This document shows positions 712-57,000 of a stretch of 64,000 nt of DNA, in pieces. Source of the DNA: Phyllobates terribilis. Lineage: Eukaryota. The notes under the pieces are model-generated. The model was given only the letters and a program-made list of their open reading frames with translations. It was not told the origin of the DNA and ran no database searches. Location of the stretch: positions 323,206,001-323,270,000 of the forward strand of contig NW_027362767.1 of NCBI RefSeq assembly GCF_046119375.1. The letters run 5' to 3'. Positions within the stretch are counted from its first letter, which is position 1, and every line of letters begins with the position of its first letter. The translations under genes and the position numbers were made by a program.

Positions 712-3700
712 ATGCCGCCAGTACACCGCTCCCGGAGCCGCAGTCCGGGCTCTCCACGGAAACGGCGCCATAGCAGCAGCAGCAGTAGCGACCGCTCCCC
801 GGAGAAGAGGACGAAAAAGTCCAGATCCCGAGAACGGGTCAGCAATGGCCACCGCCGCAGCCGCTCCAGAGAGCGCGCTCCCTCCAGCCGGCCATACCAC
901 GGCAAACAGTGGGGGGACTACTACGAGAAGGGGAAGGAGGAGATGATGAGACAGCGGCAGGAGGCGTTCATAGCCCGGTAAGGAGGACACACATCCGCCA
1001 TATATATATATCCATACAAATATCCACATACAGCGGCAGGAGGCGTTCATAGCCCGGTAAGCAGGACACACATCCGCCATATATATATATCCATACAAAT
1101 ATCCACATACAGCGGCAGGAGGCGTTCATAGCCCGGTAAGGAGGGCACACATCCGCCATATATATATATCCATACAAATATCCACATACAGCGGCAGGAG
1201 GCGTTCATAGCCCGGTAAGGAGGACACACATCCGCCATATATATATCCATACAAATATCCACATACAGCGGCAGGAGGCGTTCATAGCCCGGTAAGGAGG
1301 ACACACATCCGCCATATATATATCCATACAAATATCCACATACAGCGGCAGGAGGCGTTCATAGCCCGGTAAGGAGGACACACATCCGCCATATATATAT
1401 CCATACAAATATCCACATACAGTGGCGGGAGGCGTTCATAGCCCGGTAAGGAGGACACACATCCGCCATATATATATCCATACAAATATCCACATTCAGC
1501 GGCAGGAGGCGTTCATAGCCCGGTAAGGAGGACACACATCCGCCATATATATAGCCATACAAATATCCTCATACAGTGGCAGGAGGCGTTCATAGCCCGG
1601 TAAGGAGGACACACATACGCCATATATATATCCATACAAATATCCACATACAGCGGCAGGAGGCGTTCATAGCCCGGTAAGGAGGACACACATCCGCCAT
1701 ATATATATCCATACAAATATCCACATACAGCGGCAGGAGGCGTTCATAGCCCGGTAAGGAGGACACACATCCGCCATATATATATCCATACAAATATCCT
1801 CATACAGCGGCAGGAGGCGTTCATAGCCCGGTAAGGAGGACACACATCCGCCATATATATATCCATACAAATATCCACATACAGCGGCAGGAGGCGTTCA
1901 TAGCCCGGTAAGGAGGGCACACATCCGCCATATATATATCCATACAAATATCCACATACAGCGGCAGGAGGCGTTCATAGCCCGGTAAGGAGGGCACACA
2001 TCCGCCATATATATATCCATACAAATATCCACATACAGCGGCAGGAGGCGTTCATAGCCCGGTAAGGAGGACACACATCCGCCATATATATATCCATACA
2101 AATATCCACATACAGCGGCAGGAGGCGTTCATAGCCCGGTAAGGAGGACACACATCCGCCATATATATATATCCATACAAATATCCACATACAGCGGCAG
2201 GAGGCGTTCATAGCCCGGTAAGGAGGGCACACATCCGCCATATATATATATCCATACAAATATCCACATACAGCGGCAGGAGGCGTTCATAGCCCGGTAA
2301 GGAGGACACACATCCGCCATATATATATCCATACAAATATCCACATACAGCGGCAGGAGGCGTTCATAGCCCGGTAAGGAGGACACACATCCGCCATATA
2401 TATATATCCATACAAATATCCACATACAGCGGCAGGAGGCGTTCATAGCCCGGTAAGGAGGACACACATCCGCCATATATATATCCATACAAATATCCAC
2501 ATACAGTGGCGGGAGGCGTTCATAGCCCGGTAAGGAGGGCACACATCCGCCATATATATATATCCATACAAATATCCACATACAGCGGCAGGAGGCGTTC
2601 ATAGCCCGGTAAGGAGGGCACACATCCGCCATATATATATCCATACAAATATCCTCATACAGCGGCAGGAGGCGTTCATAGCCCGGTAAGGAGGACACAC
2701 ATACGCCATATATATAGCCATACAAATATCCTCATACAGCGGCAGGAGGCGTTCATAGCCCGGTAAGGAGGACACACATCCGCCATATATATATATCCAT
2801 ACAAATATCCTCATACAGCGGCAGGAGGCGTTCATAGCCCAGTAAGGAGGGCACACATCCGCCATATATATATATCCATACAAATATCCACATACAGCGG
2901 CAGGAGGCGTTCATAGCCCGGTAAGGAGGACACACATCCGCCATATATATATCCATACAAATATCCACATACAGCGGCAGGAGGCGTTCATAGCCCGGTA
3001 AGGAGGACACACATCCGCCATATATATATCCATACAAATATCCACATACAGTGGCGGGAGGCGTTCATAGCCCGGTAAGGAGGGCACACATCCGCCATAT
3101 ATATATATCCATACAAATATCCACATACAGCGGCAGGAGGCGTTCATAGCCCGGTAAGGAGGGCACACATCCGCCATATATATATATCCATACAAATATC
3201 CTCATACAGCGGCAGGAGGCGTTCATAGCCCGGTAAGGAGGACACACATCCGCCATATATATATCCATACAAATATCCTCATACAGCGGCAGGAGGCGTT
3301 CATAGCCCGGTAAGGAGGGCACACATCCGCCATATATATATATCCATACAAATATCCACATACAGCGGCAGGAGGCGTTCATAGCCCGGTAAGGAGGACA
3401 CACATCCGCCATATATATATCCATACAAATATCCTCATACAGCGGCAGGAGGCGTTCATAGCCCGGTAAGGAGGACACACATCTGCCATATATATATATC
3501 CATGCAAATATCCACATACAGCGGCAGGAGGCGTTCATAGCCCGGTAAGGAGGACACACATCCGCCATATATATATCCATACAAATATCCTCATACAGCG
3601 GCAGGAGGCGTTCATAGCCCAGTAAGGAGGACACACATCTGCCATATATATATCCATACAAATATCCACATACAGCGGCAGGAGGCGTTCATAGCCCGGT

Positions 3701-54000: not shown

Positions 54001-57000
54001 ATCAGATGGGGGTTGTAGTCTCCGAGTGGCTGTGACCCGGTCCGTGCCCAGGGTGTCAAACTCAGTGTGTGGCAGTCCTACAGATGTTATTAGAGTTCTT
54101 TGTGTCGACTACGCCACCCGTTGATTTGCGGTCAAAAGGCCGCCGCTGCAGCAGGGTCCACTGAGGCTGGTGATGTGTGTGCAGCTTAGGTAGTATAACC
54201 CCCAACGGGAGGGGTATAGCCTCAGGGGGTCAGCCGTGGAGGATGGTGGTTGTGAAGGTGCAGCAAGGAGACTCAGAGACATAAAATGCAGTTCCAGGGT
54301 TTTACTTACTGGTGTTGCTCGGGTCACTGTGTACAGCAGTGACCACCCAAGCCGTGCTGCGTCCACCAGGTCCTGGACTCTGTCAACTCCCAGGCAACTC
54401 CGGAGTGTGGTCCTGAGCTCCTTTCTGTCTCTCCCTTCTTCTGGCCGTTCCCACCAGGGATCCACCTAAGTCCGGCTCCCTCGGGCCTCTTGTTGGTCAA
54501 GCCTCCTCTGGGCTCCCTGACCCTATTCTTGGTCTGCCTTCCGGGTGGATTTAGTGGGTGATCGTGGCAGATCCTGCCCACGACCTCCGGTTCCTGGCTA
54601 AGGTGTGCTGTAGCCTCTGCCAGCTTGGGATCCGGTACCCTGTTGCCGACCCTTCACCCTATTAGCTCTCTTATGGGCTCTTGGGGTCCCCTCTGCGCCT
54701 CTGGGTCTCTCTTCCTTCTCCTCTGCTCTGCTTCTCAGGCTCTCAGACAGACTGTCTGACTGACTGACGTCTCACAGACTGACCCTGATCTAAGATGGTG
54801 CCCACCTTAAATACTCCCTCTATGTGTGAGCTCAGGTGACCAGCACCCAATGAGCTCCTATCTTTACCCAGGCTGCTCCCCCTATCTGCCCCTACACTAC
54901 TGGGATGTTCCACCCCCCCTCCCACTCCAGCCAGGAACAGACACTGTCGTACCTGCACATTTCTCTAGTGGGAGTACCATCGGTCTGTTCCCCGGAAATG
55001 GGATGTATGTAGTGCATGCAGCCTACTAGCTCAGTTCCACACTCCATCCTTACCCGGGAGTGGAATATCACACCTCTGGGTTGAGGTGCAATACCCCTGT
55101 AGCAGCCGAATCCTCAGGGTGCTACATGTGTACGGTCGTGGGGGAGCCTGCGGGCTGTGTGTGTGTACGATCGTGGGGGAGCCTGCGGGCTGTGTGTGTG
55201 TACGATCGTGGGGGAGCCTGCGGGCTGTGTGTGTGTACGATCGTGGGGGAGCCTGCGGGCTGTGTGTGTGTACGGTCGTGGGGGAGCCTGCGGGCTGTGT
55301 GTGTACGGTCGTGGGGGAGCCTGCGGGCTGTGTGTGTGTACGGTCGTGGGGGAGCCTGCGGGCTGTGTGTGTGTACGGTCGTGGGGGAGCCTGCGGGCTG
55401 TGTGTGTGTACGGTCGTGGGGGAGCCTGCGGGCTGTGTGTGTGTGTGTGTGTGTGTGTGTGTGTGTATAGTCGTGGGGGAGCCTGCGGGCTGTGTGTGTG
55501 TACGGTCGTGGGGGAGCCTGCGGGCTGTGTGTGTGTGTGTGTGTGTGTGTATAGTCGTGGGGGAGCCTGCGGGCTGTGTGTGTGTACGGTCGTGGGGGAG
55601 CCTGCGGGCTGTGTGTGTGTGTGTGTGTGTGTGTGTGTGTGTGTGTGTGTGTATGTATAGTCATGGGGGAGCCTGTGGCCTGCGGGCTGTGTGTGTGTGT
55701 GTATAGTCGTGGGGGAGCCTGCGGGCTGTGTGTGTGTACGGTCGTGGGGGAGCCTGCGGGCTGTGTGTGTGTACGGTCGTGGGGGAGCCTGCGGGCTGTG
55801 TGTGTGTGTGTGTGTGTGTGTGTGTGTAGTCATGGGGGAGCCTGCGGGCTGTGTGTGTGTACGGTCGTGGGGGAGCCTGCGGGCTGTGTTTGTGTGTGTG
55901 TGTGTATAGTCATGGGGGAGCCTGCGGGCTGTGTGTGTGTACGGTCGTGGGGGAGCCTGCGGGCTGTGTGTGTGTACGGTCGTGGGGGAGCCTGCGGGCT
56001 TTGTGTGTGTACGGTCGTGGGGGAGCCTGCGGGCTGTGTGTGTGTACGGTCGTGGGGGAGCCTGCGGGCTGTGTGTGTGTACGGTCGTGGGGGAGCCTGC
56101 GGGCTGTGTGTGTGTACGGTCGTGGGGGAGCCTGCGGGCTGTGTGTGTGTACGGTCGTGGGGGAGCCTGCGGGCTGTGTGTGTGTGTGTGTGTATAGTCG
56201 TGGGGGAGCCTGCGGGCTGTGTGTGTGCGGTAACAGGGGGGATCCAGATTACTGACCTGCACCCTGCATCAGATCCTAGGAATCATTTACTTTGCACCAT
56301 CTCTAATCATAAGTTGACAAAATCCAAACAGTAGGTGTATTAACGACTTCCCAATGTAGGCCATAAAGGCATGACTTATGTCAGTTTCTGACAGTGGCAC
56401 TTAGGTGATCTGATTCTGTGGCGCAATCCTTCCGCCATCTATCACCTGCCCCTTAACCAGATTGCAGGAAGCTGATGCATTTTCATTGCAACTGGGGGTC
56501 TCCTGAATACTCCTGTGGCTGAGCTAGATCATTAATCCTCATATATTGTAGTATTATATAGTATAGATTATCTAGCACTTGAAAGTCCTGTAAGGAGACT
56601 ATAAAATTAAAAAAAACAAAACAAATTAATGTATTGATTAATATTAAAAGGAAAACCAGCTGTTCATGAGGGCATGCCTACATTAGAGGTTGCTAGGATA
56701 TGCCATGACTTAATGATCGCTGGGGGCCTGATCTCTGGGGTCCCCATTTATCCTTGTTGAAGCTCCAGAATTGTTATTTCAATCTCTTTACAGTTTAAAC
56801 TTTATACAGATGGGAGGTGGACATGATGGCTGCTATGTACCACTGCTAATATGTTGAGTTACTTTCTATTTACTCCCTTTTAAGTCAATAAAATCTTAAA
56901 AGGCTATTCTCACATTAGTAGGTTATTGCCTATGACCAGCATATACCGTAATATTTTGCTCGTTGCGTGTCCTACTTCTGCGGACCCCACTGATCCTAAG

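What the first reader, a model, noticed from the sequence alone, without database searches (positions are those of the whole stretch)
951..56228. Recurrent exon-1 boundary arrays: all three housekeeping genes have a kb-scale minisatellite at the first 5' splice site
Seen: NKAP (77 bp x about 62), NDUFA1 (70 bp x 15) and UPF3B (about 35 bp x about 100) each have an unrelated array beginning in or just after exon 1, on the intron side of a CpG-rich promoter. Two of the three units contain the real donor. The units derive from local sequence, not from a shared transposon, so they arose independently. No internal exon of any gene here has such an array. Inference: a position-specific process (instability at CpG-island shores, e.g. 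pausing or R-loops) and/or selection for promoter-proximal U1 landing pads. Established: promoter-proximal U1 binding suppresses premature polyadenylation and promotes productive elongation. I do not know of a description of this as a system, but cannot verify novelty.
Basis: partly seen in the sequence, partly recalled or inferred. Interest (0 to 1): 0.9.

Follow-up and report, generated by a model that had tools for sequence, protein, structure and literature searches.

The report
Repeat arrays at first splice sites
Three neighbouring frog genes each carry a long, locally made tandem repeat at the start of their first intron, two of them copying the real splice donor 15 and 62 times; this kind of repeat is already known from human genes and looks like a tolerated by-product of repeat-prone DNA near gene starts, not a purpose-built device.

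Summary
TRF finds 77 bp x61.6 (951-5698), 70 bp x15.0 (49243-50292) and 34-36 bp x75+30 (51258-53957, 55127-56185). The first two start 27 and 36 nt inside exon 1 of NKAP and NDUFA1 and repeat a strong donor 60 and 15 times. The UPF3B array starts 82 nt into intron 1 and has no donor-like site.

- **5' bias, supported:** over the window plus five orthologous frog loci, 10 of 17 arrays lie in first introns, which are 20% of the space (P=5e-4; without the window 6 of 11, P=0.013).
- **Exon-1 exclusivity, fails:** Ascaphus has a donor array at UPF3B exon 4. Unchecked first-reader notes of this scan report junction arrays at internal exons elsewhere in this genome (EMC1, ROGDI, BSPRY, FKBP15).
- **CpG or housekeeping restriction, fails:** the CpG-poor Reeler gene has intron-1 arrays.
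- **U1 landing pads, unsupported:** one of the three arrays has no donor, and none is conserved among frogs.

Minisatellites whose first unit spans an exon-intron boundary are already described in human F7, IFI6, CBS, LMNB2 and PDGFA. In F7 only the most upstream donor is used.

Best reading: neutral, lineage-specific minisatellites born near gene 5' ends. These are new members of a known kind.

The parts
712..977 (+). NKAP exon 1 (ATG at 712; 88 codons plus 2 nt), followed by the donor CGG|GTAAGG at 978
   Evidence: Read. The 9-exon GT-AG model translates to a 365-aa NKAP with the conserved C-terminal domain. The last exon is 95-98% identical to NKAP proteins.
951..5698 (+). NKAP junction minisatellite, 77 bp x61.6. 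Each unit is the last 27 nt of exon 1, the donor and about 48 nt of intron. The last unit is cut short after 48 nt.
   Evidence: TRF. Units were parsed. 60 of 62 units keep a donor with at least 7/9 matches. Units are about 95% identical pairwise, with variants scattered in a mosaic. Read-through hits TAA at codon 89.
978..7057 (+). NKAP intron 1 (6080 nt, of which 4721 nt is array); exon 2 starts at 7058
50257..50358 (-). NDUFA1 exon 1 (34 codons), donor AAG|GTGAGT at 50256
   Evidence: The 70-aa product is 93% identical to Dendrobates tinctorius NDUFA1.
49243..50292 (-). NDUFA1 junction minisatellite, 70 bp x15.0. Each unit is the last 36 nt of exon 1, the donor and 34 nt of intron.
   Evidence: TRF. 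15 of 15 donors are identical. Read-through stops at codon 49.
45197..50256 (-). NDUFA1 intron 1 (5060 nt); exon 2 is 45196-45107 and exon 3 is 44364-44344
51071..51175 (+). UPF3B exon 1 (35 codons), donor AAG|GTGAGG at 51176. It shares a bidirectional promoter with NDUFA1.
   Evidence: Exon 1 aligns to UPF3B exon 1 in five other frogs.
51258..53957 (+). UPF3B intron-1 array, first block: 34-36 bp x75, a (TG)n stretch plus a G-rich core. It starts 82 nt after the donor.
   Evidence: TRF. GC skew is +0.41 to +0.44. No donor-like 9-mer.
53958..55126 (.). 1169-bp non-repeat insert splitting the UPF3B array, with no other copy in the window
55127..56185 (+). UPF3B intron-1 array, second block: 35 bp x30, same unit family as the first block
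   Evidence: TRF
34491..34928 (+). 56 bp x7.8 array in intron 1 of the Reeler-domain gene (exon 1 is 33814 to about 34011; exon 2 starts near 35839)
31357..32564 (.). 30 bp x40 array, intergenic, 1.2-2.4 kb upstream of the Reeler gene start
26220..26531 (.). 11 bp x29 array, about 1.2 kb upstream of the first coding exon of AKAP14 (minus strand, ATG near 25035)

Best explanation
These are ordinary, lineage-specific minisatellites, not a designed system.

**Origin.** A short local segment of 35-77 bp near the 5' end of the first intron was duplicated in tandem. In NKAP and NDUFA1 that segment happened to span the exon-1/intron-1 junction. Unequal exchange or gene conversion then expanded and homogenised the copies.

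**Why they are tolerated.**
- Only the intron grows.
- The authentic donor is the most upstream copy and the only one attached to the complete exon.
- Use of any distal copy would meet a stop codon at once and be cleared by nonsense-mediated decay.
- In the human F7 intron-7 minisatellite of the same build, experiments show that only the most upstream of the identical donors is used.

**Why near gene starts.** The clustering near gene 5' ends is most likely a mutational bias. Frogs lack PRDM9, so recombination-initiating breaks are expected at promoter-like open chromatin, and frog tandem repeats track recombination.

**Shown here:** array anatomy, donor content, stop codons, lack of conservation, and recurrence in other frogs with a 5' bias.

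**Inferred:** which donor is used, neutrality, and the recombination cause.
For: - **Anatomy and local origin:**
- **Distal donor use is non-productive:** in-frame stops at NKAP codon 89 and NDUFA1 codon 49.
- **Not conserved:** Leptodactylus, Rhinoderma and Dendropsophus have no NDUFA1 intron-1 array. Rhinoderma and Dendropsophus have no UPF3B intron-1 array.
- **Independent where present:** the Leptodactylus UPF3B array has no homology to the window's array.
- **Exchange-type turnover:** units are about 95% identical with variants in a mosaic, and multi-unit periods (154, 231) score best.
- **Recurrent and 5'-biased:** 10 of 17 arrays lie in first introns against 20% of the space, P=4.7e-4. 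Without the window it is 6 of 11, P=0.013.
- **The same junction type occurs elsewhere:** an internal exon and a CpG-poor gene in Ascaphus.
- **Literature:** the junction-spanning minisatellite class and upstream-most donor choice (PMC1557585). Frogs lack prdm9, 10.67% of X. tropicalis is tandem arrays, and arrays correlate with recombination at r=0.68 (PMC10794172). Human VNTRs are enriched at transcription start sites and CpG islands (PMC8096271).
Against: - No RNA data were available, so use of the first donor is inferred.
- Four donor-junction arrays in about 186 kb is roughly ten times my rough uniform expectation of about 0.4 (my arithmetic). Something beyond passive tolerance may favour donor junctions.
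- Classical work on duplicated strong donors often finds the copy nearest the acceptor preferred (from memory). If that held here it would make 62 copies costly.
- The recombination cause is untested in this species, and the window lies at least 75 Mb from either chromosome end.
- The placement tests are post hoc and rest on only 17 arrays.
Confidence: 0.6

Rival explanations
1. Selected promoter-proximal U1 landing pads. The repeated donors would recruit U1 snRNP to suppress premature cleavage and polyadenylation, or to boost elongation, in the first intron.
For: NKAP and NDUFA1 arrays carry 60 and 15 strong donor copies. The arrays contain no AATAAA or ATTAAA, while the rest of each first intron has 5-7. 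U1 telescripting is established biology (from memory).
Against: - The UPF3B arrays (105 units) have no donor-like site at all, so donors are not the shared property.
- The arrays are absent from orthologous introns of other hyloid frogs.
- Donor positions are no more conserved than the rest of the unit, which is uniformly about 95% identical.
- The same array type occurs at an internal exon.
Confidence: 0.07
2. Transcription-associated instability. R-loops, G-rich structures or polymerase pausing just downstream of CpG-island promoters would seed and expand the arrays.
For: UPF3B arrays have GC skew +0.41 to +0.48 on the coding strand and 59-63% GC. All three arrays lie within about 300 nt downstream of start codons that sit next to CpG-rich promoters.
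Against: - The NKAP array has negative GC skew on the coding strand, -0.10 to -0.12.
- NDUFA1 is only about +0.12.
- The CpG-poor Reeler gene has intron-1 arrays here and in Ascaphus.
- An internal-exon junction array exists in Ascaphus.
Confidence: 0.18
3. Coincidence in a minisatellite-rich genome. Arrays are seeded uniformly in non-coding DNA, and three happen to sit by first donors in one window picked out by a reader.
For: - 18% of this window is tandem array.
- Unchecked scan notes describe arrays seeded across whole loci in many introns of this genome.
- The window was selected because it looked striking.
Against: Independent loci from five other frogs still show a first-intron excess (6 of 11 against 20.6% of the space, P=0.013). 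Two further junction arrays turned up in only 27 kb of Ascaphus sequence.
Confidence: 0.12
4. Assembly artefact. The arrays would be collapsed or inflated repeats that are not present in the animal.
For: Long near-identical arrays are error-prone in assemblies. No reads were available here.
Against: Units carry a mosaic of point variants, unique flanks join cleanly, and a 1169-bp unique insert sits inside the UPF3B array. Comparable arrays occur in four independent assemblies of other frogs.
Confidence: 0.03

Closest known systems
Human F7 intron-7 37-bp VNTR (Borensztajn et al. 2006, PMC1557585)
   Same: It is a minisatellite whose first monomer spans the exon-intron boundary, so the authentic donor is followed by identical pseudo-donors. 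The unit is built from local sequence, and the pseudo-donors are silent in normal splicing.
   Different: F7 has 5-9 copies at an internal exon, with only 4 nt of exon in the unit. Here there are 15 and 62 copies at exon 1, with 36 and 27 nt of exon in the unit. Splicing was not tested here.
Human IFI6 (6-16) intron-2, CBS intron-13, LMNB2 and PDGFA intron-4 junction minisatellites (as listed in PMC1557585)
   Same: These arrays also reiterate the donor from the exon-intron border, with 10-26 copies and 12-100-bp units.
   Different: In IFI6 and CBS the first two pseudo-donors are used and give in-frame isoforms. Here any distal donor gives an immediate stop. All the human cases are at internal exons.
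Enrichment of human minisatellite VNTRs at transcription start sites and CpG islands (PMC8096271)
   Same: Tandem arrays there also concentrate near gene 5' ends.
   Different: That is a human population-scale statistic. The evidence here is one window plus five orthologous frog loci.
Recombination-associated tandem-repeat expansion in frog genomes (Bredeson et al. 2024, PMC10794172)
   Same: The genomes are frog genomes without prdm9. Many lineage-specific arrays derive from local or transposon sequence, and unequal crossing-over is proposed as the driver.
   Different: That work describes long subtelomeric domains. It does not address first introns or splice junctions. This window is at least 75 Mb from both chromosome ends.
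ABCA7 intron-18 25-bp VNTR (PMC5954066; abstract only read)
   Same: It is an intronic VNTR whose length affects splicing of the host gene.
   Different: It is a disease-associated expansion in a human gene. No effect on splicing is known for the arrays here.

Membership tests
Junction-spanning minisatellite (F7 / IFI6 / CBS type) | Head-to-tail array of a 10-100-bp unit | tested here: met
   77 bp x61.6, 70 bp x15.0 and 34-36 bp x105
Junction-spanning minisatellite (F7 / IFI6 / CBS type) | The first monomer spans the exon-intron boundary | tested here: met
   Met for NKAP (27 nt of exon) and NDUFA1 (36 nt of exon). Not met for UPF3B, whose array starts 82 nt into the intron, so UPF3B is not a member.
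Junction-spanning minisatellite (F7 / IFI6 / CBS type) | The authentic donor sequence is reiterated in the following units | tested here: met
   58 identical copies plus 2 near-identical in NKAP; 15 of 15 identical in NDUFA1
Junction-spanning minisatellite (F7 / IFI6 / CBS type) | Only the most upstream donor (or the first few) is used in mRNA | not testable with these tools
   No transcript data were available. It is inferred from the need for an intact reading frame (stops at codons 89 and 49).
Junction-spanning minisatellite (F7 / IFI6 / CBS type) | Copy number varies between alleles (VNTR) | not testable with these tools
   Only a single assembly was available.
Selected U1 / telescripting landing pads | U1-complementary 5' splice-site motifs in every array | tested here: not met
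   UPF3B arrays have no 9-mer with even 6 of 9 matches.
Selected U1 / telescripting landing pads | Conserved across related species | tested here: not met
   No such arrays in Rhinoderma or Dendropsophus. The Leptodactylus UPF3B array is non-homologous. The closest relatives, Dendrobates and Anomaloglossus, could not be read.
Selected U1 / telescripting landing pads | Copy number affects premature polyadenylation or mRNA output | not testable with these tools
   This needs an experiment.
R-loop-prone CpG-island shore repeats | Positive GC skew (G-rich) on the non-template strand downstream of the start site | tested here: inconclusive
   UPF3B is +0.41 to +0.48, NDUFA1 about +0.12 and NKAP -0.10 to -0.12.
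R-loop-prone CpG-island shore repeats | Restricted to CpG-island promoters | tested here: not met
   The Reeler promoter has CpG o/e 0.42-0.44, yet it has intron-1 arrays here and in Ascaphus.

The most novel reading that the evidence does not exclude
In frogs, which lack PRDM9, the first few hundred bases of first introns may be a recurrent birthplace of minisatellites. That zone includes the exon-1 donor junction. Unrelated lineages would then repeatedly and independently build arrays at the same genes.

On this reading, donor-side junction arrays survive because the splicing machinery picks the most upstream donor. Acceptor-side arrays are purged. Frog genomes would then hold hundreds of natural series of 10-100 identical donors, including in essential genes. 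That would make them a ready-made system for testing 5' splice-site choice and how breaks near promoters generate repeats.
Probability: 0.3. Interest if true: 0.55.

Novelty: new member of a known kind. Interest (0 to 1): 0.35.

Why it matters
NKAP and NDUFA1 have essential cellular roles (from memory). Here they carry 62 and 15 identical strong donors in a row, far more than the 5-26 in the human textbook cases, and at the first exon. If the first donor is used faithfully, these loci are extreme natural tests of the rule that the most upstream donor wins.

The recurrence of independent first-intron arrays at the same genes in distant frogs hints at a repeat-generating bias near promoters in a vertebrate group without PRDM9. 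A genome-wide count could test that directly.

As a functional system of U1 landing pads, the finding does not hold up.

Tried and rejected
1. **NKAP orthologous loci, not obtained.** The spliced NKAP protein could not be given by reference. A search with the last exon gave representatives at 50% identity, none of them amphibian. The best full-length match was a catfish protein, and searching with it returned only fish. NKAP intron 1 of other frogs was therefore not compared.
3. **Closest relatives not readable.** Only gene spans are known, 5.6 and 8.1 kb against 6.0 kb here, and these do not tell whether the arrays are present.
4. **Xenopus not found.** X. tropicalis NDUFA1 was not on record.
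5. **Homology of the UPF3B arrays rejected.** I tested whether the window's and the Leptodactylus UPF3B intron-1 arrays are homologous. No alignment had an E-value below 0.4.
6. **Shared transposon origin rejected.** The three units share only a 10-nt (TA)n match.
7. **Donor conservation test uninformative.** I looked for stronger conservation of donor positions inside the units as a sign of selection. The whole unit is uniformly homogenised.
8. **Literature.** Searches found no description of such arrays in frogs.
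Full report
**1. What is in the sequence**

Tandem Repeats Finder reports four large blocks (rerun):
- 951-5698: 77 bp x61.6.
- 49243-50292: 70 bp x15.0.
- 51258-53957: 34-36 bp x75.
- 55127-56185: 35 bp x30.

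The window contains no N.

I built gene models from the sequence.
- **NKAP** is on the + strand. It has nine GT-AG exons (712-977 through 16598-16772) and gives a 365-aa protein. Its last exon is 95-98% identical to NKAP proteins.
- **NDUFA1** is on the - strand. Its exons are 50358-50257, 45196-45107 and 44364-44344. The 70-aa product is 93% identical to Dendrobates tinctorius NDUFA1 and 89% to the Anomaloglossus and Leptodactylus proteins. The window therefore comes from a dendrobatoid-like hyloid frog.
- **UPF3B** is on the + strand, with exon 1 at 51071-51175 and exon 2 near 57826.
- The window also holds **AKAP14** (- strand, first coding exon near 25035) and a **Reeler-domain gene** (+ strand, exon 1 at 33814 to about 34011).

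**2. Anatomy of the arrays**

The NKAP array begins 27 nt before the exon-1 donor. Each unit is exon tail, CGG|GTAAGG and about 48 nt of intron. The last unit is cut short after 48 nt.

The NDUFA1 array begins 36 nt before the donor AAG|GTGAGT and is exactly 15 units.

The UPF3B array begins 82 nt inside intron 1. A 1169-bp unique insert with no other copy in the window splits it in two.

Counting 9-mers with at least 7 of 9 matches to CAG|GTAAGT gives 60 of 62 NKAP units and 15 of 15 NDUFA1 units. The UPF3B arrays have none, even at 6 of 9.

Reading from exon 1 into the array meets a stop at NKAP codon 89 and NDUFA1 codon 49. Any distal donor would therefore give a truncated reading frame.

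The three units are unrelated except for a shared 10-nt (TA)n stretch.

NKAP units are about 95% identical pairwise. Their few variants, partly CpG-to-TpG, are scattered in a mosaic, and multi-unit periods score best in TRF. That is what unequal exchange and conversion produce.

- 438 bp in Reeler intron 1 (34491-34928);
- 31357-32564, upstream of the Reeler gene;
- 26220-26531, upstream of the AKAP14 start codon.

None of the arrays in the window lies in an internal intron.

**3. Orthologous loci**

Using NDUFA1 orthologues I fetched about 22-27 kb around the NDUFA1/UPF3B promoter from five frogs. I placed their exons with tblastn.

| Species (locus) | NDUFA1 intron 1 | UPF3B intron 1 | Other arrays |
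|---|---|---|---|
| Rhinoderma darwinii (L002) | none | none | none |
| Dendropsophus ebraccatus (L003) | none | none | 20 bp x38 at 22142-22919, placement unknown |
| Leptodactylus fuscus (L001) | none | 71 bp x16, 467 nt after the donor | 38-bp array upstream of the Reeler gene |
| Mantella aurantiaca (L004) | at least two arrays | one small array | about 1.9 kb of arrays downstream of UPF3B exon 2 |
| Ascaphus truei (L005) | small AC-rich array | none | two junction arrays, described below |

The Leptodactylus UPF3B array has no detectable homology to the window's array.

Ascaphus has two arrays of exactly the junction type, confirmed by reading the sequence:
- 42 bp x15 starting in the last 12 nt of UPF3B exon 4, an internal exon, and repeating AGG|GTAAGG;
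- 37 bp x24 starting 16 nt before the exon-1 donor of the Reeler gene.

The arrays are therefore young, independent and recurrent. The junction type is restricted neither to exon 1 nor to this species.

The Reeler promoter is CpG-poor, with o/e 0.42-0.44. CpG-island or housekeeping status is therefore not required.

**4. Is there a positional bias?**

I took arrays with period of at least 10, at least 3 copies and at least 150 bp. I counted the two UPF3B blocks as one array.
- There are 17 arrays in the six sequences, and 10 lie in first introns.
- Non-array first-intron sequence is about 33 kb of 167 kb, or 20%. This is my arithmetic from the coordinates.
- The binomial probability is 4.7e-4. 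Leaving out the discovery window, it is 6 of 11 against 20.6%, P=0.013.

Within first introns the arrays also tend to start near the donor. The mean relative position is 0.24 against an expected 0.5 (my arithmetic).

Four donor-junction arrays in about 186 kb compares with about 0.4 expected under uniform seeding (my rough estimate). No acceptor-junction array was seen.

These tests are post hoc and small. They still support a real 5' bias and a real excess on the donor side.

Unchecked first-reader notes of this scan describe many further arrays in this genome:
- junction-derived donor arrays at internal exons (EMC1 exons 16 and 20, ROGDI exon 8, BSPRY exon 5, FKBP15 exon 20);
- junction-derived donor arrays at first exons (ALAD, MRPS18C);
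- promoter-proximal arrays (sororin intron 1, PRPF31, TERF2).

I could not check these notes.

**5. What is known**

Borensztajn et al. 2006 (PMC1557585) describe the human F7 intron-7 37-bp VNTR. Its first monomer spans the exon 7/intron 7 boundary. They list IFI6 (6-16), CBS, LMNB2 and PDGFA as further genes with the same arrangement.

With 50 constructs they show that the pseudo-donors are functional. Even so, only the most upstream site is selected, by a 5'-to-3' scanning-type process. The NKAP and NDUFA1 arrays are members of this class. The UPF3B array is not, because its first unit does not span the junction.

Human minisatellite VNTRs are enriched at transcription start sites and CpG islands (PMC8096271).

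Bredeson et al. 2024 (PMC10794172) report the following for frogs:
- amphibians lack prdm9;
- 10.67% of the X. tropicalis chromosomes is tandem array;
- recombination correlates with satellite repeats (r=0.68);
- unequal crossing-over is the proposed driver.

In vertebrates without PRDM9, recombination is directed to promoter-like features (PMC5519329, abstract).

I found no paper describing junction or first-intron arrays in frogs.

**6. Explanation**

The best-supported reading has three parts.

*Origin.* A short local segment near the start of the first intron is duplicated in tandem and then expanded by unequal exchange.

*Tolerance.* The arrays persist because they only lengthen an intron. 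For junction arrays, the authentic donor stays the most upstream copy and the only one joined to the full exon. For NKAP a purine-rich tract lies directly upstream of the array start at 925-950, outside the unit. Distal use would be non-productive.

Donor-side arrays would be tolerated and acceptor-side arrays purged, because an upstream decoy acceptor would capture splicing. This last step is inference.

*5' bias.* The bias is most simply mutational, and two causes are possible:
- Promoter-proximal recombination breaks in a PRDM9-less genome fit the frog literature.
- Transcription-linked R-loops fit only the G-rich UPF3B array (GC skew +0.41 to +0.48). They do not fit NKAP (-0.10 to -0.12).

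Selection for U1 landing pads is unlikely. One of the three arrays has no donor. None of the arrays is conserved. Donor positions are not better kept than the rest of the unit.

**7. Verdict**

- The NKAP and NDUFA1 arrays are new and unusually large members of a known kind.
- The open question worth a genome-wide test is whether frogs have a systematic excess of minisatellites at first-intron starts and donor junctions.

Noticed in passing
L005:3842-4477 (Ascaphus truei, UPF3B on the minus strand): A 42-bp x15 array starts in the last 12 nt of UPF3B exon 4 and repeats the donor AGG|GTAAGG. It is a junction-derived donor array at an internal exon in the most basal frog lineage.
   Followed up: yes
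L005:19777-20662 (Ascaphus truei, Reeler-domain gene on the minus strand): A 37-bp x24 array starts 16 nt before the exon-1 donor (AAG|GTACCT) of a gene with a CpG-poor promoter.
   Followed up: yes
L001:7532-8683 and L001:15876-16736 (Leptodactylus fuscus): A 71-bp x16 array lies in UPF3B intron 1, 467 nt after the donor, and is not homologous to the window's array. A 38-bp array whose unit holds AG|GTAAGG lies about 280 nt upstream of the Reeler start codon.
   Followed up: partly
L004:10426-12640 and L004:162-2036 (Mantella aurantiaca): Several related 50-97-bp arrays lie in NDUFA1 intron 1. About 1.9 kb of C-rich 21-30-bp arrays lies downstream of UPF3B exon 2.
   Followed up: partly
window:53958-55126: A 1169-bp GC-rich unique segment interrupts the UPF3B array. 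It has no other copy in the window, and its nature (insertion or old flank) is undetermined.
   Followed up: partly
window:28518-29534 (-), 36323-37404 (+), 41427-42449 (+): Three Tc1/mariner-type transposase reading frames of 338, 126+234 and 340 aa. The middle one is split by a frame change.
   Followed up: no
window:43000-43780 and 61750-62500: Two CpG-dense blocks (o/e 0.9-1.2) lie away from the known promoters. Their reading frames share a short GPSEGKY motif, so they may be copies of one repeated element.
   Followed up: no
window:925-950: A purine-rich tract (GAGAAGGGGAAGGAGGAGATGATGAG) lies directly upstream of the NKAP array start and is not part of the unit. It could act as an exonic enhancer that marks the first donor as the authentic one.
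   Followed up: no
window:951-5698 and 49243-50292: The NKAP and NDUFA1 units each contain a short (TA)4-5 run, and the UPF3B unit contains (TG)n. The NKAP unit also holds CGGCAGGAGG, close to the classical minisatellite core as I recall it.
   Followed up: no
window:27243-27454: A non-coding block conserved with Leptodactylus (L001:18987-19248) lies upstream of AKAP14. It may be that gene's promoter or a 5' non-coding exon. If so, the 11-bp array at 26220-26531 would lie in an AKAP14 first intron.
   Followed up: no
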